Of a stretch of DNA of 64,000 nucleotides, positions 22,303 to 43,803 are shown in pieces. The stretch is from the IMG/VR virus record IMGVR_UViG_3300022868_000009, positions 280,635-344,634 of that record; one strand, 5' to 3'. Under the pieces are notes generated by a model that was given only the letters and a program-made list of their open reading frames with translations, did not search any database and was not told the DNA's origin. A program made the position numbers and the translations under genes. Position 1 is the first letter of the stretch; every line of letters starts with the position of its first letter.

Positions 22303-22854
22303 ATGGAAAATTATTTTAAAATTGAACATGGAAGAAAGGTTGAGACATACACACCTAAAGATACATATGTATTAACATGGAATGAAAGACATGGTGATGC
22401 TGATCAAAGTATGCCTACATCTATGACTATACACAGTATGGATGAGTTATGGTTCATGTTATGGTTTAGTAAGTGGTTAGATAGATACAGACAGTATAGT
22501 GACTTAGATGAGTATAGTAAGGTACTTAATAAGTATAGTAAGGAGTTATTGGGTAGTAGTTGGTATATAACTGATTGGTGTAGTGATGTGTATGATCATG
22601 ATTGTATATATTCTAGTTGTTATTGTGGTGTGGATGCCATGAAGTTATATTATTATGATGAGCATGGTGTTAAGTATGAAGAGGAGATTGATGGTAGTAC
22701 ATATATATCTTTAGTGAAGATGGGATATAAGTTAGATTGTTGGTTCATTGATAAGTATCCACATATAGCTAATGAGTTACAGGGTATGATATGTGATGCT
22801 GCATTGGAAGATAAGAAGGATGTTATTGAGGCTAATAAAATGGGGTTGATATGA
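22303..22854 (+). CDS. Hypothetical, GDAD...YYYDEHGV family with C-tag (EANKMGLI)
   Basis: Start moved downstream of promoter at ~22270; paralog of 26950 and 43171. Confidence 0.75.
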   Translation: MENYFKIEHGRKVETYTPKDTYVLTWNERHGDADQSMPTSMTIHSMDELWFMLWFSKWLDRYRQYSDLDEYSKVLNKYSKELLGSSWYITDWCSDVYDHDCIYSSCYCGVDAMKLYYYDEHGVKYEEEIDGSTYISLVKMGYKLDCWFIDKYPHIANELQGMICDAALEDKKDVIEANKMGLI

Positions 22855-23183
22855 TAGATAAGAATATAGTTATAGTATCGTATAGTAAAGAGGAGTTTAA
22901 TTATGTATTGAATCTATTTAAATCTAGGGAGTTCAGTAGGTCTACGATTGATTCGTATCTACGTTACGTTAATGATGATGGTCATTATAATGATTATGTA
23001 TATCCTATTGCATTAATTGTGAGGTTTAAATTAATGTCAGCAACGTGGCAGTATAAAGATATGTGGGATCATATTAATGATTTATTAGATAGGGGTGAGG
23101 TTGATAGTGTTATTGATTGTAAAGATTTCAAAGAGATGGGTGGTGATAATTATATTGAAGGTATTAAATTAGGTTTACTTTAA
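22851..23183 (+). CDS. Hypothetical, C-tag (EGIKLGLL)
   Basis: ATGA overlap with previous tag. Confidence 0.8.
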   Translation: MIDKNIVIVSYSKEEFNYVLNLFKSREFSRSTIDSYLRYVNDDGHYNDYVYPIALIVRFKLMSATWQYKDMWDHINDLLDRGEVDSVIDCKDFKEMGGDNYIEGIKLGLL

Positions 23184-23213
23184 AGTTTAGAAGGTATTCC
23201 TTATCTTTGTATT
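23182..23213 (+). promoter_or_regulatory. Early promoter repeat aaagtttagaaggtattcc(g/t)tatctttgta containing Bacteroidota -7 element TAnnTTTG
   Basis: Near-identical copies at 23182, 25415, 26165, 30653; looser copies (GAA-N5-TCCGTAT[AC]TTTGTA) about 35 times between 22 and 61 kb. Confidence 0.85.
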
Positions 23214-23255
23214 GAATATAATTTAAAGAATAGAAAATGATAAAAGGAATAAGTA

Positions 23256-23573
23256 ATGACATATAAGGTATTGATTAAGGTTCGTAATGAATCTGAATGG
23301 ATATCATGTTGTGATATGTTGTATAGTCATGGTTATCGATGGCAAGACAATTGTATGGACTCAAAGAAGATACATGGATATAAGTTGATAAGTGAAGGTG
23401 ATATATATTTAGTTATATATAATCATACTGACCCTCATCATCATGATGATCGTTTATTTTATAATACTAATGTTAATGTTGATATTTATGGGCCGGATGT
23501 TATTATAATTAATTATGTTGAAGGTATGGATTTACATGAGATAATAGAAGTTAATAAATTGGGATTAATATGA
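23256..23573 (+). CDS. Hypothetical, C-tag (EVNKLGLI)
   Basis: Paralog of 23570 (KVRNESEW..CC.MLYSHGY.W). Confidence 0.8.
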   Translation: MTYKVLIKVRNESEWISCCDMLYSHGYRWQDNCMDSKKIHGYKLISEGDIYLVIYNHTDPHHHDDRLFYNTNVNVDIYGPDVIIINYVEGMDLHEIIEVNKLGLI

Positions 23574-23905
23574 TAGTATTTAGTAAAGATATAAAGAAAA
23601 TAAATATTAAGGTTCGTAATGAATCTGAATGGGTATCATGTTGCAATATGTTGTATAGTCATGGTTATCATTGGAATGTTGAGTCTGATTTTATGGAGAT
23701 ATATTCTGAATGTTTAGAAACTGCTAAGGAATATATTAAGACTTATGCAATAAATGATGGTATATATTTAGTTGTTTATAATGATAATAGTGGACGGTTA
23801 TATTATAATTATAAATATAAGACTGATGGTATAATAAATCTTGATTGGTATGATGGTATGGATTTACATGAGATAAATGAAGCTAATAAATTGGGGTTAA
23901 TATGA
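23570..23905 (+). CDS. Hypothetical, C-tag (EANKLGLI)
   Basis: Tandem paralog. Confidence 0.8.
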   Translation: MIVFSKDIKKINIKVRNESEWVSCCNMLYSHGYHWNVESDFMEIYSECLETAKEYIKTYAINDGIYLVVYNDNSGRLYYNYKYKTDGIINLDWYDGMDLHEINEANKLGLI

Positions 23906-24207
23906 AAGAGAAGATATACATAATATTAAATAATATAGATGATTGGATTAATTGTTGTAATCAATTAGACAATGAGGGATATTTTTGGGCAAGAAGTAGT
24001 GACTCATATAAAGATAAATATCATAAATGTAAAACTTTCGGTAATCCTGAAAATTATATAGTAATAGGTCATAATGAGTATGATGATAATCGTTTATATT
24101 ATGGTAATATATATAATGATAAGAAGTTTGATGGTATTATTTTATATTGGGATGCTGATGTAGATTTAGAAAGTTATTTTGCAGGTTTAAAAATGGGATT
24201 ATTATAA
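23902..24207 (+). CDS. Hypothetical, C-tag (AGLKMGLL)
   Basis: Tandem paralog (W..CC..L...GY.W). Confidence 0.8.
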   Translation: MKEKIYIILNNIDDWINCCNQLDNEGYFWARSSDSYKDKYHKCKTFGNPENYIVIGHNEYDDNRLYYGNIYNDKKFDGIILYWDADVDLESYFAGLKMGLL

Positions 24208-24317
24208 TAATATTTTCATGTTTGACCAGGGAGAATTTAGGTTGGAGGAAAGGGGATATTTTTATTTGGTGAAGGTTTGTTGTGTATTTGTGTATAAATT
24301 AAAATGTAAAAAAGATT

Positions 24318-24698
24318 ATGATAAAATGGATTAATATAAGGCTGGAAGGTTATGGTAAAGGTAAAGGTAAAGGTAAAGGTAAGAAGAAACTGAATAAGAT
24401 GGTTATGCGTAAATTGTTACATCAAATTGATTGTAAGGTTGGTTTTCGTATTAAGGATGGTGGATGGAAACCAGTTTTAAATAGTTTAAAAGAATATAAG
24501 CATTATAAATATATATGGATTGCTATATGTCCTTTTGGTAAAGATATGGCTGCGGATTATCATGAAAATAAAGAAGAATGGGAGAGTTATAAAGACGGTA
24601 TTGAGGCGGATGAAGCTGAGGTATGGTTGAGTTGGGAAGAGTTTATGGATTTAGATATTCAGATGATTGTTAATGGTTCTAAAATGAATTTATTATGA
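24318..24698 (+). CDS. Hypothetical, C-tag variant (GSKMNLL), GK repeat
   Basis: ORF track. Confidence 0.75.
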   Translation: MIKWINIRLEGYGKGKGKGKGKKKLNKMVMRKLLHQIDCKVGFRIKDGGWKPVLNSLKEYKHYKYIWIAICPFGKDMAADYHENKEEWESYKDGIEADEAEVWLSWEEFMDLDIQMIVNGSKMNLL

Positions 24699-25087
24699 AA
24701 GATATAAAGTGGATAAATATAATGTTAGACTGGGATAAGTTTAAGTGGGAACAATTCCATGATGTTGTTGATTATTATAAAGAGTTATTTCCTAAATTAG
24801 ATTGGACAACTGTTCAAACTGAGATACAGATACATGATAAAATTCGAAATGAATCTGTTTTTGATATTTTAGGTTTATCTATATGTTTGGAACATGATAG
24901 TAATGATTTTAATATTAATAATTGTGAAAATACTATAAATAATTGGCATCCTGTTATATTTAAGTATGGTATTGGTGATGATTTATATGACAAGCAAACT
25001 GGTATTGAAATAATTGTTAAATATAGTAAAGATTTCCGTGAAGAGATTGAGTTTTATTTAGAGGGTTCTAAAATGGGTTTATTATGA
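24695..25087 (+). CDS. Hypothetical, C-tag (EGSKMGLL)
   Basis: ATGA overlaps both sides; related to 51002. Confidence 0.8.
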   Translation: MKDIKWINIMLDWDKFKWEQFHDVVDYYKELFPKLDWTTVQTEIQIHDKIRNESVFDILGLSICLEHDSNDFNINNCENTINNWHPVIFKYGIGDDLYDKQTGIEIIVKYSKDFREEIEFYLEGSKMGLL

Positions 25088-25416
25088 AAAAAACAATAAT
25101 ATTTTTACATAACAATAAGGATTTGGGCAACTTGTTCATGTATTTACATGTTATTGGATGCAAATGGTCTAGTGGTAGACCTATTATAATAGATAGTGAA
25201 ATACAAAGATTTAATTTATCTTGTTCTAGATCTAAATCTGTTGCAATTATCGTTGATGATGGTAGTCTTACTTATGTATCAAATAAGAAAGATATTGTTT
25301 ATAGTTATATATCTGGTGATAAATTTAAATATTATGATCATTATGAGTATGTAGATTTTGATAAGGAGTTTGATATTGATGTAACTATTAATGGTAATAA
25401 GATGGGATTACTTTAA
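25084..25416 (+). CDS. Hypothetical, C-tag (NGNKMGLL)
   Basis: Paralog of 25469/25801 (YLH.IG.KW, YDHYEY). Confidence 0.8.
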   Translation: MKKTIIFLHNNKDLGNLFMYLHVIGCKWSSGRPIIIDSEIQRFNLSCSRSKSVAIIVDDGSLTYVSNKKDIVYSYISGDKFKYYDHYEYVDFDKEFDIDVTINGNKMGLL

Positions 25417-25468
25417 AGTTTAGAAGGTATTCCGTGTCTTTGTATTATAATTAAAGGAGGAAACAAAA

Positions 25469-25804
25469 ATGAAAATGATAATATATGCACATAATGACGA
25501 AGATATTTATAAGTTATCAACTTATTTACATTATATTGGAATTAAATGGCAAACTGAAATTTTTATTATGAATGATGGTGAAATGACAATAGATTGTAAT
25601 AGAGCTGAATCTAAATCTATTGCATTTTGTGTTAAAAATAATCGTGTGTCATATATGAATGATGGTGGTTCTTTTGGTGGTGATGTTTATAATTTTTTCA
25701 AAAGGCAACCATATGAATGTTATGACCATTATGAGTATATTGAATTTGATAAGGAGTTTGGTGTTGATATGGTTTTAGAATCAATAAAGATGGGTTTATT
25801 ATGA
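25469..25804 (+). CDS. Hypothetical, C-tag (ESIKMGLL)
   Basis: Promoter and AGGAGG upstream. Confidence 0.8.
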   Translation: MKMIIYAHNDEDIYKLSTYLHYIGIKWQTEIFIMNDGEMTIDCNRAESKSIAFCVKNNRVSYMNDGGSFGGDVYNFFKRQPYECYDHYEYIEFDKEFGVDMVLESIKMGLL

Positions 25805-26166
25805 AAAAAACAATAATATATGTACATAGTGATGAGGATATGATTAATTTATTAAGTTATTTACATTTTGTTGGAGTTACATGGCATGGCTCTGCTATTA
25901 TAAAAGATGATGATAGTTCCGATAATTTTTTTAATGCCGATGCCAGATATATAGATATTAGTTGTAAAAAAACGGGAACTGTTGGATTTTGTATTGATCA
26001 AGATGATTATATTACATATATGGATGATGGTACTTTTAAAGGCGAGAATGTTTATGAATATTTCGGTAGAGATTTTATGGAGTATGATCATTATGAGTAT
26101 GATGAATATGTTGAAAAGTTTGATATTGAACCACTCATAAATGGAATAAAGATGGGTTTACTTTAA
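25801..26166 (+). CDS. Hypothetical, C-tag (NGIKMGLL)
   Basis: Tandem paralog. Confidence 0.8.
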   Translation: MKKTIIYVHSDEDMINLLSYLHFVGVTWHGSAIIKDDDSSDNFFNADARYIDISCKKTGTVGFCIDQDDYITYMDDGTFKGENVYEYFGRDFMEYDHYEYDEYVEKFDIEPLINGIKMGLL

Positions 26167-26218
26167 AGTTTAGAAGGTATTCCGTATCTTTGTATTATAA
26201 TTAAAAAGGAGAAGAAAA

Positions 26219-26473
26219 ATGAAAAAGAAACAAAATAAAAAAGAAGAGAGTAAATATCAATACAGAAGTGATACTGCTGTTAGGGTTGAAGAAACTGAAT
26301 ATAGTGTAAATGAGTATGACGAATGGGATCGCATAGTATTTTATTTATGGAAGAAGAGTGGTTATTGGTCTGTGAATGTTTTTGCTCCTGTAACTGATGG
26401 TAAAAGGGTTTCATTAGAACCTTTACAAGTAATTCATAAGTATTGGACATCTTATAATAAATTATCAATATGA
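26219..26473 (+). CDS. Hypothetical protein
   Basis: Promoter and SD upstream. Confidence 0.7.
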   Translation: MKKKQNKKEESKYQYRSDTAVRVEETEYSVNEYDEWDRIVFYLWKKSGYWSVNVFAPVTDGKRVSLEPLQVIHKYWTSYNKLSI

Positions 26474-26736
26474 AAAGATTAAATATATTTGTAAGAAGTG
26501 GATTACAGCAAACGTTGTTTCTACATTATTTATATACTAATGGTTATAGTTATAAAGATAGAAAGGATCTTTATTGGAAATTTACTAATGGTTCAGGTGC
26601 TATTGTGGTTAATGTAATTGATAAAATAATATTAGGTGGTAACACAGGTTGGTTTGCAACACAATCACATATGAATGTAAAAGAATTTGTTGATAAGGCG
26701 TGGGAATTTGAAAGTATGAGGATTGGTGTATTATGA
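26470..26736 (+). CDS. Hypothetical, degenerate C-tag (ESMRIGVL)
   Basis: ORF track. Confidence 0.7.
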   Translation: MKRLNIFVRSGLQQTLFLHYLYTNGYSYKDRKDLYWKFTNGSGAIVVNVIDKIILGGNTGWFATQSHMNVKEFVDKAWEFESMRIGVL

Positions 26737-26949
26737 TTAAGGAATATCATATATGTATTATAAATAAAAAGGAGAAAAAAATGCTAACAATATTAACAAT
26801 ATTATTAATATGGAATCAATTTAGTGGTTGGTTTAGAAAGATGTTTTGTAAAATTGGTTTACACACATGGATTAAAGTCTATTCACATAATGAAAAAGGT
26901 TGGCATATAAAGGAAAAGAAATGTAGAATATGTAATAAGGAGGTAAAAA

Positions 26950-27459
26950 ATGATAAAAATAATAGAAAATAAAACACAAACTAAAAGAATTGAACCTTAT
27001 TATAGGTTAAAATTTAGTTACATGATTGGTGATGCTGATGGTGACACTACAGAGAAGATTGATATTCCTCTTAACAATCCATATGTCGAAAGAGTTGTTG
27101 ATGTTTTAAATAATTGTGATACACCTAAAGGTCATTGGGGTATGATATTAGACTCTGAACATTTCACTAAGTTATTGAATCAGGGTAAAATGACACAGAG
27201 TGATTATAATTTTTGTAAAGTGGTTGTATTTGGTGATGACATTGATGAACACATGGAAGAGTTTTTCAGCAAGGAAAGAATTGAGGCTGACAAATTAAAA
27301 TTATTGGAGATAACTGGCGATGAAAAATCATACGCTTATGAATTTGAAGAGGCTTGTATTACTTCGATTGGACATAGTTTCGCAGTTTTTGAAGGTATTG
27401 ATTTATATTATATTGATGAATATGGAGTAAAACATGAGACCAAAATAGTTGATGATTAA
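26950..27459 (+). CDS. Hypothetical, GDAD...YYIDEYGV family lacking the C-tag extension
   Basis: Shared motifs with 22303 and 43171. Confidence 0.75.
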   Translation: MIKIIENKTQTKRIEPYYRLKFSYMIGDADGDTTEKIDIPLNNPYVERVVDVLNNCDTPKGHWGMILDSEHFTKLLNQGKMTQSDYNFCKVVVFGDDIDEHMEEFFSKERIEADKLKLLEITGDEKSYAYEFEEACITSIGHSFAVFEGIDLYYIDEYGVKHETKIVDD

Positions 27460-27533
27460 AACATTAAAATGGTAAGGAATTTCAGAAGGAGTTCCTTATC
27501 TTTGTATTAATATTAATTTAAAGAAGAAATAAA

Positions 27534-27761
27534 ATGATAAAATATAAAATAACAGATGAAAAAATTGAAGTAGGCGACATTGTTGCTTATGGAATAACAT
27601 GGAGAGAGAAACGTGTAAGAAAGCACGGTTATGTACTTGGTGTTTGGGAAGAATATTGGGATGAGGATTCACAGAAGTTTAGAAATAAGGTTGAATGTGT
27701 TGATAAAGATAATCATATAATTCGTAGTGAAGAATGGTTAAAAAAGGTGGTATTGATATGA
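27534..27761 (+). CDS. Hypothetical protein
   Basis: Promoter upstream. Confidence 0.65.
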   Translation: MIKYKITDEKIEVGDIVAYGITWREKRVRKHGYVLGVWEEYWDEDSQKFRNKVECVDKDNHIIRSEEWLKKVVLI

Positions 27762-28063
27762 TAAAACGATATTATAAAATAGGAATAGATATTCCTGATA
27801 ATAAATTTGTTAAGTTGATATCAGATCATTTATATTCTTTGGGTTATAAATGGTGTAGTGATTTTAGAGACGAATCTTTTTATGATAAAGTAACGAATGA
27901 ATGTATAAGAAGTAATGTGCGTGGTATTGGTGTTGAATGTAATGGTCGCATGAGTTACAATGTTGTTAAAAATCAAACTGAAAAGTGGTATTCTCTTGAA
28001 GAATATGTAATAAAATATGATTTAGTGATTGAATATGAAGGATTAAAAATGGGTTTATTATGA
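27758..28063 (+). CDS. Hypothetical, C-tag (EGLKMGLL); paralog of 49238/49534
   Basis: HLYSLGY.W...GIGVE..G..SYNV. Confidence 0.8.
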   Translation: MIKRYYKIGIDIPDNKFVKLISDHLYSLGYKWCSDFRDESFYDKVTNECIRSNVRGIGVECNGRMSYNVVKNQTEKWYSLEEYVIKYDLVIEYEGLKMGLL

Positions 28064-28176
28064 GAAAGAGAAAACGAATCAAGGAAAATATTGACTATTT
28101 GTTATTTGGAATGGATTGTGCATTGATAGTATTATTTGTATTATTCATAGTATTAATTATAATTTAGGAGGAAAAA

Positions 28177-28527
28177 ATGAGAAAAATATATTTAGCAACA
28201 AATTATTTCACAGCGTTAACCCCGCTTGATGATGATAACAATTTATTAAAATTAGAAAGAGGTAAAGATCCTGTTATTATTTGTACCCTTGAGAAATATC
28301 TGGAAGATGTTGATAACACAATAATCACAGGTAACATATTAAGATTAGAAATAATTGCAAAAACAGATGATGGTTGGATAATTGAACAAGAATTTATAAC
28401 ACCGGGAATGTTAGAGAGTTTGAATTGTAGAAAGATAAGTCTTGACTCACAATTTATTGAAACTTTAAATCGAAGCCAGAAAGTGGCTTTAGAGTTAAAG
28501 AATATAAATGAAAAATTGTCAAGGTAA
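28177..28527 (+). CDS. Hypothetical protein
   Basis: AGGAGG upstream. Confidence 0.7.
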   Translation: MRKIYLATNYFTALTPLDDDNNLLKLERGKDPVIICTLEKYLEDVDNTIITGNILRLEIIAKTDDGWIIEQEFITPGMLESLNCRKISLDSQFIETLNRSQKVALELKNINEKLSR

Positions 28528-28695
28528 ATTTTTTTATTAAGTAGAATCACCGTATATTTGTATTATACAATTGAGAAGATAGAAAAAGAAGAGAAATAAA
28601 CAGAATGATTTTTTAATTCAGAATAAAGTTCTTATCTTTGTATAGACAAAAACAAGTAAACATAATATTAATTAATTTAAAAAACGAAAAACAAA

Positions 28696-29010
28696 ATGGC
28701 AAACAAAAAAGATTTAACAAACGCAATTGCAATAGCTACAGGCAAAACAAAAAAAGATAGCAAAGAATTAGTAAACGTCATAATGGCATCTATTAAATCT
28801 GAATTAAGTAACGGTGAAGGTTCTATCGTAAAATTAGTAAACTTTGGAACATTTAAAGTAGTTAATCGAAAAGCAAGAAAAGGAAGAAATCCAAGGACTG
28901 GTGAATCAATTGATATCCCTGCAAAGAATGTAGTTAGATTCAAAGCTGGTAAAGGTCTTAAAGAAGCGGTTGATTATACTGCTGAAGAAAGAGAAGAATT
29001 AGGAATATAA
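28696..29010 (+). CDS. hup: HU-family DNA-binding protein, copy 1
   Basis: NFGTFKV..RKARKGRNPRTGESI.IPAK.VVRFKAGK.LKEAV. Confidence 0.95.
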   Translation: MANKKDLTNAIAIATGKTKKDSKELVNVIMASIKSELSNGEGSIVKLVNFGTFKVVNRKARKGRNPRTGESIDIPAKNVVRFKAGKGLKEAVDYTAEEREELGI

Positions 29011-29034
29011 GAAATAAAACTCCTGAAATATCGA

Positions 29035-29060
29035 AGCCACCTGGAGAGGTGGCTTTTTTT
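29035..29060 (+). terminator. Intrinsic terminator
   Basis: agccacct-ggag-aggtggct followed by T-run. Confidence 0.9.
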
Positions 29061-29087
29061 ATTTGAAAAAATTCCTTATATTTGTAT

Positions 29088-29408
29088 ATGAATAACGAAA
29101 AATATATAAGGTTTAAGGTAAAAACTCTATCAGATAGTAAGAGTATTCAAGAATTTTTATTTTCTTTAGGATATATGTGGTGTTCAGAAAATAGGAAAGA
29201 ATATTATTATATGAATTTTGAAACGTCTGATATTTTATTATGTCTTGAGAGTGACTTTAATCCTAATATAGATCATATTTTTCATGGTGATGTAGAGATA
29301 TTAAATTATGATAAAAGATGGATGGATAAGATAATAAAATCTTATGATATGAGTAATTATAAAGATTTTATTCAATATAAAAATGCAAAACAACTGGGAT
29401 TAATTTAA
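29088..29408 (+). CDS. Hypothetical, C-tag (NAKQLGLI)
   Basis: Paralog of 29439 (IQEFLFSLGY.W). Confidence 0.8.
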   Translation: MNNEKYIRFKVKTLSDSKSIQEFLFSLGYMWCSENRKEYYYMNFETSDILLCLESDFNPNIDHIFHGDVEILNYDKRWMDKIIKSYDMSNYKDFIQYKNAKQLGLI

Positions 29409-29438
29409 TATTAAGAACAAACTCCGTATCTTTACACT

Positions 29439-29744
29439 ATGAAAAAACATGAAAAATTTATATTATTTAAGGTTGATACTTCAAGGGAAAGTAAGGAAAT
29501 TCAAGAATTTTTGTTTTCTTTAGGTTATTCTTGGCGTGGAGATAATAATATGGAATATTTCTCTGTTGAAATTGGGGCTTATATTTTATTATGTGTTGAT
29601 AGTAATAATATTAAGAGCAAAAATTGTATTTTTTATGGAAATGATAAAATGCAATATGATCAAGAACTTATAAAATCTTATAACATGAATAATTATAAAG
29701 ATTCTTTATGTTTTATAGAATCATTTAAATTGGGATTATTTTAA
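29439..29744 (+). CDS. Hypothetical, C-tag (ESFKLGLF)
   Basis: Tandem paralog. Confidence 0.8.
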   Translation: MKKHEKFILFKVDTSRESKEIQEFLFSLGYSWRGDNNMEYFSVEIGAYILLCVDSNNIKSKNCIFYGNDKMQYDQELIKSYNMNNYKDSLCFIESFKLGLF

Positions 29745-29777
29745 AATTGAGAACAAACTCCGTATCTTTACATAGTT

Positions 29778-29833
29778 AAAGGGCGGAGAATTTTTATAGG
29801 TTCTGGGAGAGTAGACTCCAACTTGCGATATAT
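29778..29833 (+). ncRNA. Repeated small structured RNA, copy 1
   Basis: aaagggcggag-hairpin-gagagtagactccaacttgcg immediately after promoter, no ORF. Confidence 0.6.
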
Positions 29834-29883
29834 TTTTTTTAACACAATTTTTATTTCTTAGAAGTAATCCGTATCTTTGTTAT

Positions 29884-30315
29884 ATGAAAATGAAAGTATT
29901 ATATATTAAAGCTGAAAACATGAAAGATGGTGATTTTGACATTATGTTAAAATTTGTTAATAATAATAAAAATTTAGATTATTATTTAACAGGTATAAAT
30001 ATGGGGGGTATTATGAGAACATTTATATGTATAGCCGTAAATGATGATAATTATAATGAGGTTAAAGAAAAATTATTCTCTAAATATAATACACCATCAC
30101 ATATTACTGATTTTCAAAATTATGAAGATTATAAATATCCCTATTTATCAATTGAAATATCAATGGAAAATGAACATGCAGATCATTTAACTATTCATCC
30201 TTTGAATGATGATGATGTAGATGTTAAAAATTTTGAAATAATTTATAGTAATATTGATGACATATTTGATGATATTGATATGCATATAACTACAAAAAAA
30301 CTTGGTTTATCTTAA
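29884..30315 (+). CDS. Hypothetical, C-tag variant (TKKLGLS)
   Basis: ORF track. Confidence 0.7.
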   Translation: MKMKVLYIKAENMKDGDFDIMLKFVNNNKNLDYYLTGINMGGIMRTFICIAVNDDNYNEVKEKLFSKYNTPSHITDFQNYEDYKYPYLSIEISMENEHADHLTIHPLNDDDVDVKNFEIIYSNIDDIFDDIDMHITTKKLGLS

Positions 30316-30330
30316 CTAAAAAAAATAATT

Positions 30331-30651
30331 ATGAGAAAATTTAATTGTATTAAAATAGAAAATGAAGAACATTTAAATGAATGTTATAAAAAGATAATTG
30401 ATCTTAAAACACATTATCCATATAACACTTTTGTTGATAGATTTATTATGATAAAGGGTTATTGTATTGGTTTTGAAATAGAAGAAATAGAAGAAGGAAG
30501 ATTAATTTTAACATTTTTAACTGATAATGATCTTCAACGATTTGATGAATCAAATGAATTAGCTTTTAATTGTAATTATTTTAATGATATTGATTCTTTT
30601 GTTGAATATCATAAGATTTATTTTGATTGTAGATCATTAGGGGTTTTATAA
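30331..30651 (+). CDS. Hypothetical, C-tag variant (CRSLGVL)
   Basis: ORF track. Confidence 0.75.
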   Translation: MRKFNCIKIENEEHLNECYKKIIDLKTHYPYNTFVDRFIMIKGYCIGFEIEEIEEGRLILTFLTDNDLQRFDESNELAFNCNYFNDIDSFVEYHKIYFDCRSLGVL

Positions 30652-30704
30652 GAAAGTTTAGAAGGTATTCCGTATCTTTGTATAAATATTAAAATAATAT
30701 AATT

Positions 30705-31166
30705 ATGGAATTAGATAAAGCAAGAATAAAAATGAGAGAATTGTTATCAAAACATGGTCTTGATAATTGGAGTTTTGATTTTGATAGAGCAGTTAGACGT
30801 TTAGGTCAATGTGTTTGGAAAAAGAATAGTATCATGACTCGAAAAATTACTATGTCTAGAATTATGACTGAAAGTAGAACTGATAAAGAAGTTATTAATA
30901 CAATGTTACATGAAATAGCACACGCAATAGATTTTGAAACAAGGGGTAGAAGTGCTCATGATGATGTTTGGAGATCAATTGCATTGAGTATTGGTTGTGA
31001 TGGTAATAGATCTAGTAATGTTGATGTTGAGGTTTCAGAAAAGAATTATAAGTGGTTGGCTATATGTCCAGAGCATGGTGTTTTGGGTGGATGGCAAAGA
31101 AAACCAAAAGATAATAAAATGTGTAAAAAATGTAAAAGTAAAATCATAATAAAGGAAAATAAATAA
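30705..31166 (+). CDS. SprT-like zinc metalloprotease with C-terminal Zn ribbon
   Basis: RRLGQC, TMLHEIAHA, AHDDVW, C..H...C..C. Confidence 0.88.
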   Translation: MELDKARIKMRELLSKHGLDNWSFDFDRAVRRLGQCVWKKNSIMTRKITMSRIMTESRTDKEVINTMLHEIAHAIDFETRGRSAHDDVWRSIALSIGCDGNRSSNVDVEVSEKNYKWLAICPEHGVLGGWQRKPKDNKMCKKCKSKIIIKENK

Positions 31167-31167
31167 C

Positions 31168-31995
31168 ATGAAAATAAAAGAAATAATAAGAAAAATATAT
31201 GATAAAACCGGACATGGATATACTGCTACGGCTATTAGTGTTTTAAAAAAATCTGGTTTGATGGGTGATAAAACACATCAAAAGATTAAGAACATTGTTG
31301 AGAATGAAATTCAAAGATATGAAAAAGAATATTTTGAAAAATATAAGTCTTATATTAGTGAGTATAGATATGAATCACCAACTATGATTTTATCAATAAT
31401 GTATATTGATGGTTTTAAAGGAAAATATACTGATTCTTATAAGAAGATTCAGAAAGAGATTCAAAGAATTGACACATCAGAATTAAAGTCATATAAATCT
31501 TTAATAAAGAAAGCTAAATCTACTGATCATTTGCTAAGTAAGATATCCCATTATAAAAGAGCATTATCATTTCGAGGGGATAAAAAAATTGAAGAGAAAT
31601 TGAAAGATTTAGAGGAGGATTTTCACTCAGATCAGATTATAGAGGATGAGAAGCAATTTTCAGAGAATACTATTCAATTAAAAGATTCCTCTATAATCAA
31701 AATTTATCTTGATCCGAATAACAGAAATACTTTGATGATGGAACAAGAACAAGAAGGTAAAAAAGGTTTTAGGTTAGTTAATCATTTTGCAGCTATACCA
31801 CCATTGAAAGAAACTACTGACATATTTTGGATTGGTGAAAGAACTTCAAAAGCAACTGGTTATAAACATAATTCAGAGGCTTTAATAATAATGAGAGATG
31901 AAAATGATACAATAAGAATATATTATAAAGGAAGTTTATTAATAGAAAATTATTGTGAAGAAGAATTAAAAAAAATTATAAATAAAATTAAATAA
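31168..31995 (+). CDS. Hypothetical protein
   Basis: 275-aa ORF. Confidence 0.75.
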   Translation: MKIKEIIRKIYDKTGHGYTATAISVLKKSGLMGDKTHQKIKNIVENEIQRYEKEYFEKYKSYISEYRYESPTMILSIMYIDGFKGKYTDSYKKIQKEIQRIDTSELKSYKSLIKKAKSTDHLLSKISHYKRALSFRGDKKIEEKLKDLEEDFHSDQIIEDEKQFSENTIQLKDSSIIKIYLDPNNRNTLMMEQEQEGKKGFRLVNHFAAIPPLKETTDIFWIGERTSKATGYKHNSEALIIMRDENDTIRIYYKGSLLIENYCEEELKKIINKIK

Positions 31996-32003
31996 AACAA
32001 ATT

Positions 32004-32210
32004 ATGTGGATAACAATTGGAATAATAATAGGATTAGTAATAGGTGGTTGGTTAGGATATCAGGCTTGTATGGCAAAATATAGACCTACAGAATTACTTA
32101 AATTAGCAAAAATACAAACTGAAATGATTTCAGGTGAAATAACACCGGAAAAGGCTTTAAAAGAGATACATCAAATTGAAATTGAACACCCTGAATTGAA
32201 AAAGAAATGA
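32004..32210 (+). CDS. Small membrane protein
   Basis: N-terminal TM (ITIGIIIGLVIGGWLGY). Confidence 0.7.
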   Translation: MWITIGIIIGLVIGGWLGYQACMAKYRPTELLKLAKIQTEMISGEITPEKALKEIHQIEIEHPELKKK

Positions 32211-32530
32211 AAAAGTATAAATTTATAACAGAAAGTGATTATGGTGATTTGCAACTCATCATTTATTTTGAAGATAGAGATGAATCTATTAAAGTTCAAA
32301 ATGAAATGATAGAACGTGGTTATTTAAAAATCACAGAGACAAATACACAAGATAAAGATTTATATCCATTTTCTGTTTGGTTTGAACCTAAAAATAAAAT
32401 AATGAATGGTGGTCAAAAGAATTCTGAATATATGTTAAGGTATGGTAGATCATTACATTCTGATATATTTATGGAGTATATAGATAATCTGGAAGCATTA
32501 TTTGAGTCTTTAAAAATGGGTTTGTTATAA
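32207..32530 (+). CDS. Hypothetical, C-tag (ESLKMGLL)
   Basis: ORF track. Confidence 0.8.
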   Translation: MKKYKFITESDYGDLQLIIYFEDRDESIKVQNEMIERGYLKITETNTQDKDLYPFSVWFEPKNKIMNGGQKNSEYMLRYGRSLHSDIFMEYIDNLEALFESLKMGLL

Positions 32531-34452: not shown

Positions 34453-34483
34453 ATTTGAATAATCTCCGTATATTTGTACTATC

Positions 34484-34537
34484 AAAAGGCGGAGTTTTAA
34501 AAGAACCCCGAAGAGTAGACTCCAATTTGCGTTATAT
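34484..34537 (+). ncRNA. Repeated small structured RNA, copy 2
   Basis: aaaaggcggag-gttttaaaagaac-cccgaagagtagactccaatttgcg after promoter. Confidence 0.6.
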
Positions 34538-36440: not shown

Positions 36441-36593
36441 ATGGCAATTAAAAGATGTACTTGTAAAAATGAATTTCAAGATGAGAAATATGGTAAAGGA
36501 AAAAGAGTATTTACTCAATCTAGCGTACCTAAAGAAGGTGGAACCGCAAAAGAAGGTAAATCAAGATGTACTGTATGTGGATCAACAAAATAA
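36441..36593 (+). CDS. 50-aa Zn-ribbon protein missed by the ORF track
   Basis: MAIKRCTCKNEFQDEKYGKGKRV...RCTVCGSTK; promoter and AGGAGG upstream. Confidence 0.8.
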   Translation: MAIKRCTCKNEFQDEKYGKGKRVFTQSSVPKEGGTAKEGKSRCTVCGSTK

Positions 36594-36685
36594 TACGAAT
36601 TATTTTTTATTTAAGTATAAAGTTCGTATGTATAACAATTAAACAATTAAATTATTTATTAATAACACTAAAACAAAAAATTAAA

Positions 36686-37000
36686 ATGGCAAACAAAAAA
36701 GACTTAACAAACGCAATCGCTTTAGCAACAGGTAAAACTAAAAAATCAAGTAAAGACCTAGTTGATGTTATCATGGCATCTATTAAAGCTGAATTATCAA
36801 ATGGTGAAGGTTCAATCGTGAAATTAGTTAATTTCGGAACATTCAAAGTAGTAAACAGAAAAGCAAGAAAAGGTAGAAACCCTAGAACTGGTGAATCAAT
36901 CAACATACCTTCAAAAAATGTTGTTAGATTTAAAGCTGGTAAAGCATTGAAAGAAGCAGTTGATTATACTGCCGAAGAAAGAGAAGAATTAGGACTATAA
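36686..37000 (+). CDS. hup: HU-family DNA-binding protein, copy 2 (start corrected)
   Basis: Near-identical to 28696 protein. Confidence 0.95.
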   Translation: MANKKDLTNAIALATGKTKKSSKDLVDVIMASIKAELSNGEGSIVKLVNFGTFKVVNRKARKGRNPRTGESINIPSKNVVRFKAGKALKEAVDYTAEEREELGL

Positions 37001-40668: not shown

Positions 40669-40725
40669 TTTTTAATTCTTGAAAGATATCCTTATCTTTG
40701 TATAAACAATTAAAGATAAAATATC

Positions 40726-40917
40726 ATGGCAAAAAGAAAAAGAAAAAGAACAAAAAAAATCAAAGAATTTAAAATAACTTTAGATGACTTTCTAAAAGCT
40801 AATCGTATAGGATCTAGAGAGGCAGAATTAGAACAAAATGGAACTGGTTGGAAATCTAATCGAAAAGCATATAAAAATAAAAAATCATATTCACGCAAAG
40901 ATAAACACAGAAATTAA
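40726..40917 (+). CDS. Small highly basic protein
   Basis: KANR.GSREAELE...GW......KNKK.Y.RK.KH. Confidence 0.75.
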   Translation: MAKRKRKRTKKIKEFKITLDDFLKANRIGSREAELEQNGTGWKSNRKAYKNKKSYSRKDKHRN

Positions 40918-41186
40918 TGGAATTCAATCAATTATCATATCAAATAATAGTTACGATGAATTAATGGAAGAACTTAAAGGTTTTATTGATTTTAAAGAAA
41001 ATGATAGTTTACGACCGAATATCGTGACTATAAACAAGATTTTAAAGCAACATGGGATCATTATGAAGTTTATAAACGTAAAGTTATATGGGATAGTAAT
41101 GATTATATATTTAATATGAATGAACAGTCTATTAAAGAAATAATTAATAAAATTAAAGAAATAATACCATATAAATTAAAACTATT

Positions 41187-41513
41187 ATGATTAAACTATT
41201 AGCAATAAAAATATATTCTAAAACAAGATTATTACAAATATTAGATGATCTTAAAAAGAACTATAATATACATAAAACATACAATAATGATTGGGTAGGT
41301 TTTAAAGGTATAAGAGAAGGTGGTATATTTGTATATATCAATATTGAATCAAATATAAAGTTATATGGTTGGGATTATATTTACAAAGATTATGATAAGG
41401 AATATGTACCAAGTACTATCAGCAATGGTTTAAAACACAAAACATTAATAATAATAGATAACGATTTACCAATATCAGCAATAATAGAATCAAATAAATT
41501 TAACTTAATATAA
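41187..41513 (+). CDS. Hypothetical, C-tag variant (ESNKFNLI); paralog of 53504/54920
   Basis: AI.IYS...L...W.GF..I..GG. Confidence 0.8.
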   Translation: MIKLLAIKIYSKTRLLQILDDLKKNYNIHKTYNNDWVGFKGIREGGIFVYINIESNIKLYGWDYIYKDYDKEYVPSTISNGLKHKTLIIIDNDLPISAIIESNKFNLI

Positions 41514-41526
41514 AAAAGGAGACAAA

Positions 41527-41805
41527 ATGATTGAAACTAAAACAAAAGAATTAGTAATAAATAAAACAACTATTAAGAAATCATTAATAATTCATGAATG
41601 TAAAAGATGTGGAAATACACACCTAATACATATTGAATATGAGATTGAAAACATAGATACATCTTGGGAAGAAGAAATGATTGCATTCTCTGATGGTTAT
41701 TGGTGTGAAAAATGTAATCATGTTATAAGTGAAGATGAAAATCATACTTCCACTTATGTTATTACTTCATCTACAAATGATGATTTTGATATAAGAAAAA
41801 TATAA
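41527..41805 (+). CDS. Zn-ribbon hypothetical protein
   Basis: CKRC...CEKC. Confidence 0.7.
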   Translation: MIETKTKELVINKTTIKKSLIIHECKRCGNTHLIHIEYEIENIDTSWEEEMIAFSDGYWCEKCNHVISEDENHTSTYVITSSTNDDFDIRKI

Positions 41806-41806
41806 T

Positions 41807-41890
41807 GCCAAAATGGCGAAATAGGTAGACGCGCCAGGTTTAGAACCTGGTGTCCATTAGGACGTGTGGGTTCGAGTCCCACCTTTGGTA
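41807..41890 (+). tRNA. tRNA-Leu(UAG)
   Basis: ccagg-ttTAGaa-cctgg, long variable arm. Confidence 0.92.
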
Positions 41891-41906
41891 CAAAATAATT
41901 AAAAAT

Positions 41907-42221
41907 ATGAAAAATATAGAAGAATATTATTTTATAACAATTGAAACTAAAAAATGTAACAATGGAAATATTAATGAAATATTAGACTATTGTATAAAAA
42001 TAGGACTTCAACTTCAGTATCCACGGCAAAGCTACGAAACTGATGAATATTTAGTAATGTGTTTCAAAAGTTATCATAAAGCAATTGCTAATTGTGATGC
42101 TGGTATAGTTTACGGAACTAATGATTTATTAGAAGAACTAGATTATATGTTATCACCAGAAGAATTTTTATCTGGTGAATATGACTACTTATTCGATGCA
42201 GGAAAATTAAACTTAATTTAA
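41907..42221 (+). CDS. Hypothetical, C-tag variant (DAGKLNLI), start corrected
   Basis: ATG downstream of tRNA. Confidence 0.75.
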   Translation: MKNIEEYYFITIETKKCNNGNINEILDYCIKIGLQLQYPRQSYETDEYLVMCFKSYHKAIANCDAGIVYGTNDLLEELDYMLSPEEFLSGEYDYLFDAGKLNLI

Positions 42222-42278
42222 AAATATAACATTTAAACTTTTTATTCCAGAATAATCTCCGTATATTTGTACTATAAT

Positions 42279-42332
42279 AAAGGCTGAGAGATTAAACTCC
42301 CCCAGAAGAGTAGACTCCAACTTGCGTTATAT
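42279..42332 (+). ncRNA. Repeated small structured RNA, copy 4
   Basis: aaaggctgagagattaaactcccccagaagagtagactccaacttgcg after promoter. Confidence 0.6.
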
Positions 42333-42642
42333 CCCCGCACACAAGAATAATATATACCAATAAACAGATTCGTGATTCGACTGCTTGCGTCAAAGCCTCG
42401 AATCACGATCATGTTGATATATCTAAGTTACATGTTTAAATTCAATTTTATTACATTTAAGTTTTTTTACCTGAAAAAAATCCGTATATTTGTATAACAA
42501 GATTGGAAATAATCTTACACTTTTCTTGAAAATTTCAAGAAATAAAACTTTAAAAATATTTTTAATGTAAGAAAAATTTCACTATATTTGTATATAACAA
42601 TTAAGAAAAATTATTTATTAACCTTTTAAAACCTTAAAGACT

Positions 42643-42951
42643 ATGGCAAACAGAAAAGACCTTATCAATGGTATCGCATCAGCGACCGGTAAAACAAAAA
42701 AAGATTCTAAAATCGCTTTAGAAGCAATGCTTTCAATTATGAAAAAAGAATTAGGCGATGGCGGAGAAATTAAACTTGTAAATTTTGGTACCTTTAAAAT
42801 CGTAGCAAGAAAAGCTCGAAAAGGAAGAAATCCTAGAACAGGTGAATCAATCAACATTCCTGCAAAGAATGTAGTTAAATTTAAAGCTGGTAAAGGCCTT
42901 AAAGAAGCGGCTGATTACACAGCAGAAGAAAGAGCTGAATTAGGACTATAA
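42643..42951 (+). CDS. hup: HU-family DNA-binding protein, copy 3
   Basis: NFGTFK..ARKARKGRNPRTGESINIPAK. Confidence 0.95.
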   Translation: MANRKDLINGIASATGKTKKDSKIALEAMLSIMKKELGDGGEIKLVNFGTFKIVARKARKGRNPRTGESINIPAKNVVKFKAGKGLKEAADYTAEERAELGL

Positions 42952-42969
42952 ACCTAATAATTCTATAAT

Positions 42970-42998
42970 AAAAAGAGGATTTATTAATCCTCTTTTTT
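42970..42998 (+). terminator. Intrinsic terminator
   Basis: aaaaagaggatt...aatcctcttttt. Confidence 0.85.
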
Positions 42999-43170
42999 AT
43001 TGCGATAAACACTATTTAGATTTAGTCTAAATAAAAATAATAATTCAAATTATTATATTAAGAAGATTATCCCTATATTTAATAAATAAATTAAAAAATT
43101 ATGCAAAAAGTAGAAATAATATTAAGTGTGGTGGATATGGATTGTTTCATTAAAAATAATAATAACAATT

Positions 43171-43803
43171 ATGATTAAAATAGGAGAAAAGAAAATAATA
43201 CATAAAGATTGTATATACTTTGAAAATAGTATATGTTTTGGAGATGGCGATACATATAGTACCGTTAAATATGAAATACCTAACAATGAAGTAGGACACA
43301 ATACAATTTTACTTGCATTATTCTTAGGATATTATGATGAATATTCAGATGGAGGTATAAAAAATCTACCAAATTGGATTCAAGATGAATTAAAAACATT
43401 AGACCTTCTAATTCTAAATAGATGGAATATAAATAAAAAAACAAATGTTAAAGATACAGATGAAAGAGAACTTATGTATATCTTTAATGATTCTGAAGAA
43501 CATTCAGGATATTTTGGTTGGGTTGATGGTACAGATATATATTATTATGATAAAGATGGTGTATCACATGATATTGAAATATTTGGTATATCATTCGATA
43601 AACAAACTAATCATACAGCAATAGATATAATGCTTAATATATATGCATGGTTTCTAAGTAAGTGCAAAGAAATAACAATGGAAAAATTTAAAGACTTAGT
43701 AAGATTTGAATATAGAGTAAAATTCAAGGAAATAATAGAGGACAAACCCGAACTAAAAGACCTTAAAATTAAAATAGAAGCCGCTAACCTTGGCTTATTA
43801 TAA
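43171..43803 (+). CDS. Hypothetical, GDGD...YYYDKDGV family with C-tag (EAANLGLL)
   Basis: Paralog of 22303/26950. Confidence 0.75.
   Translation: MIKIGEKKIIHKDCIYFENSICFGDGDTYSTVKYEIPNNEVGHNTILLALFLGYYDEYSDGGIKNLPNWIQDELKTLDLLILNRWNINKKTNVKDTDERELMYIFNDSEEHSGYFGWVDGTDIYYYDKDGVSHDIEIFGISFDKQTNHTAIDIMLNIYAWFLSKCKEITMEKFKDLVRFEYRVKFKEIIEDKPELKDLKIKIEAANLGLL

What the first reader, a model, noticed from the sequence alone, without database searches (positions are those of the whole stretch)
22303..43803. A paralog trio shows the C-tag is a detachable module
Seen: ORFs 22303, 26950 and 43171 share GD[AG]D near the N-terminus and YY[YI]D..GV..[ED] later. ORF 26950 stops right after that motif, while the other two continue with dissimilar ~55-75-aa extensions ending KMGLI and NLGLL. 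Inference: the tag was added to, or lost from, an independent domain and is not part of its fold.
Basis: partly seen in the sequence, partly recalled or inferred. Interest (0 to 1): 0.6.

Follow-up and report, generated by a model that had tools for sequence, protein, structure and literature searches.

The report
Portable tail tag on phage proteins
In a huge T4-type phage, two of three related proteins carry an added helical linker ending in the same short tail found on about sixty unrelated small proteins, so the tail is a portable, label-like module whose reader is still unknown.

Summary
ORF1 (22303-22854), ORF2 (26950-27459) and ORF3 (43171-43803) are the only three ORFs in the 344-kb virus record with GD[AG]D and YY[YI]D..GV..[ED]. 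A profile built only from 66 foreign homologs ranks them 1-3 of 769 ORFs. HHalign of ORF1+ORF3 against the family gives 95.8%, E 7e-9, and the match ends at ORF3 residue 137.

The shared core belongs to a widespread phage family of unknown function (best PHROG 8562; 179 cluster representatives). None of 147 foreign members carries the tag, and nearly all end within 12 residues of the second hairpin, as ORF2 does. ORF2 alone folds confidently (pLDDT 88) and has no PDB match.

So the change was a gain. ORF1 and ORF3 acquired a 45- or 64-residue helical linker plus a tag, consensus hydrophobic-E-[AGS]-x-K-[ML]-G-L-L. That tag ends about 60 otherwise unrelated small proteins in this genome, including LRR proteins. 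It occurs almost only at C-termini (54 terminal, 14 internal) and its codons vary synonymously.

The function is inferred only: a docking or sorting peptide read by one shared receptor. I favour head loading, since the genome has a T4-type capsid protein and head protease. A degron or hub-binding motif remains open.

The parts
22303..22689 (+). ORF1 core domain (residues 1-129), a divergent member of the phrog_8562-like family
   Evidence: GDAD and YYYDEHGVKYE motifs. Foreign-family HMM E 6e-5.
22690..22824 (+). ORF1 linker (residues 130-174, 45 aa), no detectable relative apart from a weak match to the ORF3 linker
   Evidence: Kept in frame in the diverged variant P0011.
22825..22854 (+). ORF1 C-terminal tag IEANKMGLI plus stop codon
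   Evidence: A tag scoring matrix trained on the other 60 carriers ranks ORF1 31st of 546 ORFs.
26950..27459 (+). ORF2, the untagged canonical family member (169 aa), ending 6 residues after the second hairpin motif
   Evidence: AF2 pLDDT 88. Tag score rank 334 of 546.
43171..43581 (+). ORF3 core domain (residues 1-137)
   Evidence: The AF2 model has the same hairpin-helices-hairpin order as ORF2, at lower confidence.
43582..43773 (+). ORF3 linker (residues 138-201, 64 aa), predicted as three helices
   Evidence: helices 147-164, 170-191 and 193-206, pLDDT 52-72. No relative found elsewhere in the genome.
43774..43803 (+). ORF3 C-terminal tag IEAANLGLL plus stop codon
   Evidence: Tag score rank 23 of 546. 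Rank 10 when only positions -6 to -14 are scored.
56218..56697 (-). Independent example of the same tag on a known fold: MKYLKTY N-terminal motif, LRR domain, then ...NANKMGLY
   Evidence: Pfam LRR_4 E 8e-17. Paralog at genome 97218-97820 has LRR_4 at 7e-28. Tagged and untagged LRR relatives exist in related phages.
19245..32530 (.). First array of small ORFs ending in the tag. It contains ORF1 and ORF2.
48352..62046 (.). Second set of arrays of tagged small ORFs, on both strands
49021..49833 (+). Another tagged/untagged set: the 60-aa untagged ORF 49021-49203 is 52-55% identical to the N-terminal halves of the tagged 99-aa ORFs 49238-49537 and 49534-49833
22268..22282 (+). Promoter-like motif TCCTTATCTTTGTAA just upstream of the ORF1 start, one of about 33 copies between 22.2 and 44.7 kb

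Best explanation
**Shown.**
- The three ORFs share an autonomous domain of about 130-165 residues: a beta-hairpin carrying GDxD, a helical insert, and a beta-hairpin carrying YxDExG. The domain belongs to a family widespread in large lytic and huge phages, whose normal architecture ends right after the second hairpin.
- In this phage lineage one branch of the family, ORF1 and ORF3, gained a helical linker of 45 or 64 residues that ends in a C-terminal peptide of 9 to 14 residues. Its consensus is hydrophobic-E-[A/G/S]-x-K-[M/L]-G-L-L-COOH.
- The same peptide ends about 60 small proteins in this half-genome that share no detectable similarity, and 27 and 43 more in two related phages.
- The tag is therefore a portable short linear motif selected at the protein level and tied to the free C-terminus. 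The trio shows it grafted onto a fold that works without it.

**Inferred.** One peptide placed on dozens of unrelated cores behaves as an address or docking label read by a single shared receptor. The linker serves to hold it clear of the folded domain.

**Preferred mechanism, about 0.3 on its own.** The tag loads its carriers into the T4-type prohead, in the way the N-terminal capsid targeting sequence does for T4 internal proteins. The carriers would then be injected with the DNA as a diverse set of early-acting proteins. The conserved Glu at -8 followed by Ala/Gly/Ser could be a head-protease site that removes the label.
For: **Homology and polarity.** Searches support homology of the three cores. 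Searches show that none of 147 foreign members is tagged, including a 151-aa homolog in the 462-kb phage LR756500.1.

**Autonomy of the core.** ORF2 folds at pLDDT 88 without an extension. In the ORF3 model the extra part is three helices after the last strand.

**The tag is real and acts as a peptide.**
- The pentapeptide pattern is terminal 54 times and internal 14 times in 107,950 residues, against about 0.07 terminal occurrences expected.
- The logo extends to -9, with weaker signal at -13 and -14.
- Codons vary synonymously (Gly GGA 33, GGT 17, GGG 8, GGC 2; several Leu codons). Met and Leu alternate at -4. All three stop codons follow the tag, and downstream sequences differ.
- A scoring matrix trained without the trio ranks ORF3 23rd, ORF1 31st and ORF2 334th of 546 ORFs.

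**Modularity beyond the trio.**
- Cores of the tagged ORFs fall into 9 small clusters and 37 singletons at BLASTP 1e-3.
- The tag occurs on LRR_4 proteins.
- Tagged/untagged pairs exist in the LRR family and at 49021-49833.
- An N-terminal motif MK[YH]LKT[YF][NE]E combines freely with the tag: 34 ORFs carry it, 19 of them with the tag.

**For head loading.**
- The genome has a gp23-like major capsid protein (PF07068, E 5e-25). Next to it is an 811-aa protein with a head maturation protease domain (phrog_207 at 8e-30; Peptidase_S77 at 23.5 bits).
- T4 internal proteins are described as a highly diverse set sharing only a capsid targeting sequence (PMC3012670).
- That sequence, MKTYQEFIAE (bioRxiv 10.1101/2021.01.19.427310), resembles the N-terminal motif seen here.
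Against: - No receptor was identified and nothing shows where the tagged proteins go.
- The ORF3 model is of low confidence (mean pLDDT 64.5), so I cannot exclude that the linker packs onto the core.
- The T4 targeting sequence is N-terminal, not C-terminal.
- Residues around Glu -8 fit neither the T4 (L/I-x-E) nor the phiKZ-type (S/A/G-x-E) cleavage context well. Both contexts are recalled from memory, not tested here.
- More than 100 distinct cargo species per genome would be unusually many.
- The tagged genes lie in arrays that look like early-gene arrays, some behind a TATAAT-containing promoter motif, whereas head cargo needs late expression.
- Very fast divergence from one ancestral tagged protein could mimic unrelated cores for the orphan carriers. 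This does not apply to the trio or the LRR proteins.
- The pairing of ORF1 with ORF3 in the tree may be long-branch attraction.
Confidence: 0.7

Rival explanations
1. The tag is a C-terminal degron. A host or phage AAA+ protease or tail-specific protease recognises the non-polar free C-terminus, so that a large set of early proteins is short-lived or cleared at a set time.
For: The tag is strictly C-terminal and ends in non-polar residues. It sits on many unrelated small proteins in arrays that look like early-gene arrays. A degron can serve any number of carriers.
Against: The tail is not LAA-like (ssrA motif recalled from memory). Conservation extends over at least 9 residues with a fixed Glu, a small residue, Lys and Gly, which is more than known simple non-polar-tail degrons need. 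No ClpP, S41 peptidase or PDZ domain was found in this 48% fragment, though the host could supply them.
Confidence: 0.2
2. The tag is a hub-docking motif of the sliding-clamp type. x-[L/M]-x-L-[L/F] at the extreme C-terminus resembles the bacterial beta-clamp motif QL[S/D]LF (for example QLGLF or QMSLL, from memory). It would tether many phage proteins to the clamp or to another host hub.
For: Hydrophobic residues at positions 2, 4 and 5 and the C-terminal position match. A few carriers have Gln at position 1: QLGLL, QLGLI, QMGLL.
Against: Position 1 is Lys in 48 of 62 carriers and Gln in only 4. The carriers are orphan proteins of about 100 aa and LRR proteins, not replication or repair enzymes. 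Sixty competitors for one clamp pocket is hard to rationalise. No beta-clamp or gp45-type clamp gene was found in the fragment.
Confidence: 0.08
3. On how the tag arrived: ORF1 and ORF3 arose when a core gene lost its stop codon and fused with a small tagged gene of about 55-75 aa lying downstream. The linker would be the remnant of that gene. The alternative is that the tag spread as a discrete cassette.
For: Free-standing tagged ORFs of 60-66 aa exist (20648-20830, 50358-50558). Genes in these arrays overlap or abut as ATGA or TAATG, so a single change could fuse neighbours. In other phages the core C-terminus also carries unrelated additions: P0025 +125 aa, P0105, P0131.
Against: The linkers match no other ORF in the genome beyond the tag itself, so no donor can be named.
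Confidence: 0.3
4. The conserved 3' end is a nucleotide signal, such as a ribosome-binding site or coupling signal for the next gene or a terminator, and the peptide is a by-product.
For: Many tagged genes abut the next start (TTATGA, TAATG), and the Gly codon GGA/GGG lies 8-9 nt before that start.
Against: Gly is GGT or GGC in 19 of 60 carriers. Leu codons vary, and Met (ATG) alternates with Leu (TTA, CTT, TTG) at -4. The tag is equally present on genes followed by long intergenic regions (22851, 25084, 25801, 32207, 43171). Conservation continues upstream as amino-acid classes (Glu at -8, A/G/S at -7).
Confidence: 0.03
5. The three cores are not homologous, and the shared motifs are chance or convergence.
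For: Pairwise identity is low (20-27%), and the N-terminal 60 residues of ORF1 and ORF3 are not significantly similar on their own.
Against:: same best PHROG, top three hits of a foreign-only HMM, HHalign 95.8%, colinear motifs, and the same predicted order of secondary structure.
Confidence: 0.02

Closest known systems
Capsid targeting sequence of phage T4 internal proteins (MKTYQEFIAE)
   Same: A short terminal peptide is the only feature shared by a highly diverse set of small phage proteins, and it is portable to foreign proteins (PMC3012670; bioRxiv 10.1101/2021.01.19.427310). This genome has a T4-type capsid protein and head protease. It also has a T4-like N-terminal motif, MK[YH]LKT[YF][NE]E, on 34 ORFs.
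   Different: The tag studied here is C-terminal, unrelated in sequence, and far more numerous. Neither packaging nor cleavage has been shown.
Encapsulin cargo-loading peptides
   Same: Short C-terminal peptides rich in Gly and Leu/Ile on unrelated cargo proteins, read by the inner face of an HK97-fold shell (from memory).
   Different: There is no encapsulin here. The motif differs, and any receptor on the phage capsid protein is purely hypothetical.
Bacterial beta-clamp-binding pentapeptide QL[S/D]LF
   Same: Pattern x-L-x-L-[F/L], often at the extreme C-terminus.
   Different: Lys rather than Gln at position 1 in most carriers. The carriers are not replication or repair proteins. No clamp gene was found in the fragment.
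C-terminal degrons and tethering tails of AAA+ proteases (ssrA ...LAA, SspB C-terminal ClpX-binding tail)
   Same: Short portable C-terminal peptides ending in non-polar residues, which work on any carrier.
   Different: The sequence is different and the conserved stretch is longer. No protease link has been found.
Poxvirus ankyrin/PRANC (F-box-like) multigene families
   Same: Large families near a genome end that combine variable binding domains (here LRR among others) with one conserved C-terminal docking element. This is an analogy from memory.
   Different: Those are eukaryotic viruses with a folded C-terminal domain of about 50 aa and a known ubiquitin-ligase partner. Here the element is a peptide of 9-14 aa with an unknown partner.
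PHROG 8562 and related uncharacterised proteins of T4-like, T5-like, SPO1-like and jumbo phages
   Same: The trio's core matches this profile. The ORF2 model resembles BFVD models from Vibrio phage pVp-1, Klebsiella phage JD18, Bacillus phages Mater and G, and others.
   Different: All have unknown function. The matches of ORF1 and ORF3 are weak, and these two alone carry the linker and tag.

Membership tests
phrog_8562-like phage core family | Significant match to a family profile | tested here: met
   phrog_8562 is the best hit of all three (E 3e-4, 5e-4, 2e-3). Foreign-only HMM: 3e-55, 6e-5 and 4e-3. HHalign 95.8%.
phrog_8562-like phage core family | Topology: hairpin (GDxD turn), helical insert, hairpin (DExG turn) | tested here: met
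   ORF2 model at pLDDT 88 has strands 17-26, 31-40, 143-155 and 161-163 with six helices between. ORF3 has the same order at pLDDT 64.5. ORF1 was not modelled.
phrog_8562-like phage core family | Protein ends within about 12 residues of the second hairpin | tested here: not met
   Met by ORF2 and by nearly all of 147 foreign members. Not met by ORF1 (+54 aa) or ORF3 (+73 aa). This is the point of the finding, not a reason to exclude them.
T4-type capsid targeting sequence | N-terminal peptide of about 10 residues | tested here: not met
   The tag is C-terminal. A separate N-terminal motif resembling MKTYQEFIAE exists on 34 ORFs, but none of the trio has it.
T4-type capsid targeting sequence | T4-type head assembly genes in the same genome | tested here: met
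   Gp23 PF07068 at E 5e-25. Head maturation protease phrog_207 at 8e-30, and S77 at 23.5 bits, below the cut-off of 27.
T4-type capsid targeting sequence | Carriers are present in virions and the signal is removed by the head protease after Glu | not testable with these tools
   Only compatible: Glu in 33 of 62 carriers at -8, and A/G/S in 56 of 62 at -7.
Beta-clamp-binding motif QL[S/D]LF | Gln at position 1 | tested here: not met
   At position -5: K 48, N 5, Q 4 of 62.
Beta-clamp-binding motif QL[S/D]LF | Hydrophobic residues at positions 2, 4 and 5, often at the C-terminus | tested here: met
   M/L at -4, L at -2, L/I/F at -1.
Beta-clamp-binding motif QL[S/D]LF | Binds a sliding clamp | not tested
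   No clamp gene found in the 48% fragment. The host is unknown.
ssrA-like C-terminal degron | Non-polar extreme C-terminus that needs the free carboxylate | tested here: inconclusive
   The tail is non-polar and almost only terminal, but its sequence is not LAA-like. Degradation is not testable here.
Encapsulin cargo-loading peptide | Short C-terminal peptide on unrelated cargo, read by an HK97-fold shell | not testable with these tools
   The first half is met. No evidence on a shell receptor.
Pfam LRR_4 (for the tagged ORF 56218-56697) | Score above the Pfam gathering threshold | tested here: met
   61.3 bits against a cut-off of 27. The paralog scores 96.4 bits.

The most novel reading that the evidence does not exclude
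The C-terminal tag and the separate N-terminal MK[YH]LKT[YF][NE]E motif may form a two-signal sorting code. With it, a T4-type huge phage (CheckV estimate 48% complete at 344 kb) would load well over a hundred diverse small proteins into its capsid for co-injection, among them LRR binders and the ORF1/ORF3 domain. That would be a C-terminal counterpart of the T4 capsid targeting sequence, expanded on a scale not described before. A related alternative is that the tag tethers variable binder domains to one host machine, such as a protease, as a family of adaptors.
Probability: 0.25. Interest if true: 0.85.

Novelty: new variant of a known kind. Interest (0 to 1): 0.6.

Why it matters
Portable terminal peptides such as signal peptides, the T4 capsid targeting sequence, encapsulin cargo peptides and degrons are among the most useful things to know about a proteome. 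One receptor then explains the fate of many proteins, and the peptide can be used as a tool.

Here a single peptide of 9-14 residues marks roughly one in nine ORFs of a huge-phage half-genome. Nearly all of these proteins are otherwise unannotatable.

The trio gives the cleanest natural experiment. The same fold occurs with and without the label in one genome, and a deep outgroup shows that the label was added. This makes the question testable: tag or untag ORF2 and ORF1, then ask where they go and what they bind.

I found no paper mentioning the motif. In IMG/VR it appears confined to one lineage of at least three phages.

Tried and rejected
**Searches that found nothing useful.**
- DNA and tblastn searches of the GenBank phage collection with the region and with ORF1 gave no match. 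ORF2 found only LR756500.1.
- A word-index search with ORF1+ORF3 found only themselves and a near-identical variant.
- The search for related loci with the family alignment failed, because no stretch was conserved enough.
- Full-text search for KMGLL, KLGLL and MKYLKTY returned only unrelated papers.

**Function of the core remains open.**
- Pfam gave nothing above threshold for the trio.
- Fold searches of the confident ORF2 model: Foldseek against PDB, no hit at E <= 1e-3. VIA-align wide, best Z 3.1. ESM Atlas, only viral hypothetical proteins at TM 0.47 or below by query.

**Candidate receptors.** Searches of the genome for DNA_pol3_beta, gp45, Peptidase_S41, ClpP and PDZ_2 were all negative. 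The record is about half a genome, so this shows little. DNA polymerase B is present only as a fragment next to an inserted 533-aa ORF, so its C-terminus could not be checked for a tag.

**Complex prediction.** One job paired the gp23-like capsid protein with the last 35 residues of ORF1, supplied as an alignment of 43 tag ends. It returned 'no answer' (score 0.00). This is evidence neither for nor against binding.

**Other.**
- The ORF1 and ORF3 linkers were searched against all genome ORFs for a donor gene; nothing appeared beyond the tag.
- dN/dS on the extension was not possible: the variant P0011 differs by one codon there, and the relative G003 is identical.
- No alternative genetic code was needed. 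TAA, TGA and TAG all terminate tagged ORFs.

Full report
**Setting**

The window is the last 64 kb of a 344,634-bp IMG/VR virus record. Its GC content is 25%, and CheckV estimates it to be 48% complete. It is a tailed phage with T4-type parts:
- tail sheath, topoisomerase II and ribonucleotide reductase;
- a gp23-like major capsid protein (PF07068, E 5e-25);
- next to it, an 811-aa protein whose first 200 residues match a head maturation protease (phrog_207 at 8e-30; Peptidase_S77 at 23.5 bits).

The window carries nine tRNA genes and long arrays of small ORFs.

**The observation**

In the whole record these two patterns occur only in these three ORFs, both among the 769 ORFs and in the six-frame translation.

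ORF2 ends six residues after the second motif. ORF1 continues for 54 residues and ORF3 for 73, ending KMGLI and NLGLL.

**Are the cores homologous?**

Yes, though remotely.
- Pairwise BLASTP gives E 2e-4, 2e-5 and 5e-4.
- All three have the same best PHROG, 8562, of unknown function.
- A word-index search found ORF2 relatives at 35-45% identity. An exhaustive profile search then found 179 cluster representatives at E <= 1e-3.
- An HMM built from 66 of these foreign proteins, with nothing from this genome, ranks ORF2 (3e-55), ORF1 (6e-5) and ORF3 (4e-3) as the top three of 769 ORFs, aligned colinearly.
- Profile-profile comparison of ORF1+ORF3 against the family gives 95.8% probability and E 6.7e-9 over 133 columns. 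It covers ORF3 residues 1-137 and stops there.

**What is the core?**

With the family alignment, AlphaFold2 models ORF2 at pLDDT 88 and pTM 0.81. The order is a beta-hairpin whose turn is the GDADGD motif, six helices, then a second hairpin whose turn is DEYG. ORF3 gives the same order at lower confidence, followed by three extra helices at 147-206 and a short coil at the end.

I found no solved structure that resembles the ORF2 model. The nearest predicted structures are uncharacterised proteins of T4-like, T5-like, SPO1-like and jumbo phages. The function of the core stays unknown.

**Direction of the change**

I read the C-termini of 147 foreign family members. None ends in the tag, and nearly all stop within about 12 residues of the second hairpin. 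The same holds for the 151-aa homolog in the 462-kb uncultured phage LR756500.1. Its 40-kb neighbourhood has no tagged ORF.

The untagged form is therefore ancestral, and ORF1 and ORF3 gained the extension.

A quick maximum-likelihood tree places ORF2 inside the main clade (support 95). ORF1 and ORF3 pair with each other (aLRT 80) in another clade of untagged proteins. Both are long branches, so the pairing may be an artefact.

It agrees, however, with a weak colinear similarity of the two linkers (p about 0.03). One gain followed by a duplication is the simplest reading. The linkers match nothing else in the genome, so I cannot name a donor. Fusion with a small downstream tagged gene is plausible but unproven.

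**The tag itself**

About 62 ORFs in the record end in a K[ML]GLL-like tail, and 45 of them lie in this window.

- *Extent.* Anchored at the C-terminus, conservation runs from -1 to -9: L, L, G, M/L, K, x, A/G/S, E, hydrophobic. There is weaker signal at -13 (L/I) and -14 (D/E).
- *Position.* The pentapeptide pattern is terminal 54 times and internal 14 times in 107,950 residues. About 0.07 terminal occurrences would be expected.
- *Level of selection.* It is selected as a peptide. Gly and Leu codons vary, ATG alternates with Leu codons at -4, all three stop codons follow it, and the downstream DNA differs.
- *The trio.* A scoring matrix trained on the other 60 carriers ranks ORF3 23rd, ORF1 31st and ORF2 334th of 546 ORFs. 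The ranking holds when only positions -6 to -14 are scored.

**Modularity beyond the trio**

- With the last eight residues removed, the carriers fall into nine small BLAST clusters and 37 singletons.
- Two carriers are bona fide LRR proteins (LRR_4 at 8e-17 and 7e-28).
- Two related phages share about 80% nucleotide identity with this genome over the parts that align. They hold 27 and 43 tagged ORFs.
- In those phages the LRR family varies from 99 to 239 aa, all ending ...KMGLY-like. Untagged LRR members lie beside them.
- The untagged 60-aa ORF 49021-49203 is an N-terminal paralog of the tagged ORFs 49238 and 49534.
- A second terminal motif, N-terminal MK[YH]LKT[YF][NE]E, occurs on 34 ORFs, 19 of them with the tag. 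The two ends combine freely.
- In IMG/VR an exact-pattern scan found several tagged genes per contig only in this lineage.

**Mechanism**

What is shown is the architecture: an autonomous domain, an added helical linker, and a portable C-terminal peptide.

What is inferred is that one peptide on dozens of unrelated cores is a label read by one receptor, and that it needs the free C-terminus.

I favour loading into the T4-type prohead, at about 0.3, for four reasons:
- the genome has the T4 head module;
- T4 internal proteins are the textbook case of diverse proteins sharing only a targeting peptide (PMC3012670);
- the N-terminal motif here resembles the T4 sequence MKTYQEFIAE;
- Glu at -8 followed by a small residue would suit a protease that cuts after Glu.

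A degron (about 0.2) and a clamp-like or other hub-docking motif (about 0.1) fit the data nearly as well. The rest of the probability is unassigned.

A single complex prediction with the capsid protein gave no answer, and I do not use it either way.

**Verdict**

It is sharpened in three ways:
- the change was a gain;
- what was gained is a linker plus a tag of 9-14 residues;
- the three proteins belong to two deep branches of a widespread family rather than being recent paralogs.

The tag appears to be undescribed. It is a new variant of a known kind of thing, a portable terminal targeting or docking peptide.

Noticed in passing
window 22268-44728, + strand (e.g. 23198, 25431, 26181, 30669, 33463): Intergenic motif TCCGTAT[C/A]TTTGTAT has 41 matches at up to 3 mismatches, against 3.4 expected. 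About 33 are on the + strand, just upstream of genes and tRNA or RNA elements. They are often preceded by a T-run plus AGAA and followed by TATAAT. This is probably one promoter class for the 22-45 kb block. It is absent from the tagged arrays at 48-62 kb.
   Followed up: partly
whole record; in the window e.g. 20304, 21030(-), 21458, 52802(-), 55235(-), 56218-58746(-): N-terminal motif MK[YH]LKT[YF][NE]E occurs on 34 ORFs, 19 of which also carry the C-terminal tag. It resembles the T4 internal-protein capsid targeting sequence MKTYQEFIAE.
   Followed up: partly
window 29774-29830, 34480-34535, 42273-42330, 44729-44785 (+): Four copies of a conserved element of about 50 nt (AAAGGCNGAG ... GAAGAGTAGACTCCAACTTGCG), each directly after a copy of the promoter motif. 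It is a candidate small RNA family and has no Rfam match.
   Followed up: partly
window 28696-29010, 36566-37000, 42643-42951 (+): Three HU/IHF-like paralogs (judged by eye from the sequence, not scanned) share an unusual acidic C-terminal extension, DYTAEER[EA]ELG[IL].
   Followed up: no
window 62362-63189 (+): A 275-aa ORF starts MITRIAPSPTGY, which looks like the catalytic core of a glutamyl-tRNA synthetase (judged by eye, not scanned). It ends ...NNGLL, a partial look-alike of the tag.
   Followed up: no
window 21760-22300: A 540-bp AT-rich non-coding gap lies at a strand switch, and the GC skew flips sign here (about -0.3 before, +0.5 after). It looks like a divergent control region or a module boundary.
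   Followed up: no
G000 genome 1788-3440, 8010-9752, 93117-94694, 95580-97226, 100168-101979, 130817-132418, 181954-183675 (outside the window): A family of paralogs of about 525-600 aa (N-terminus MILTK.VKVKV...YY; most copies share an internal FVGS..KLGLYYN). One copy lies beside a DNA polymerase B fragment, which suggests mobile insertions that split genes.
   Followed up: no
L002 (ENA contig, 11.7 kb) and L107 (LR756500.1): In two other huge-phage contigs the untagged ORF2-type gene lies within 2 kb of a 298-aa gene. The L002 copy is a Pfam cation-efflux (PF01545) protein. The L107 copy looks related only by its similar C-terminal sequence.
   Followed up: no
window 12781-13953 (-): A thymidylate synthase of 390 aa covers the whole 266-position Pfam model, so it carries large insertions.
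   Followed up: no
G000 genome 5467-7902 (-) (outside the window): The head maturation protease domain is the first 200 residues of an 811-aa protein that lies next to the capsid gene. It may be a protease-scaffold fusion.
   Followed up: partly
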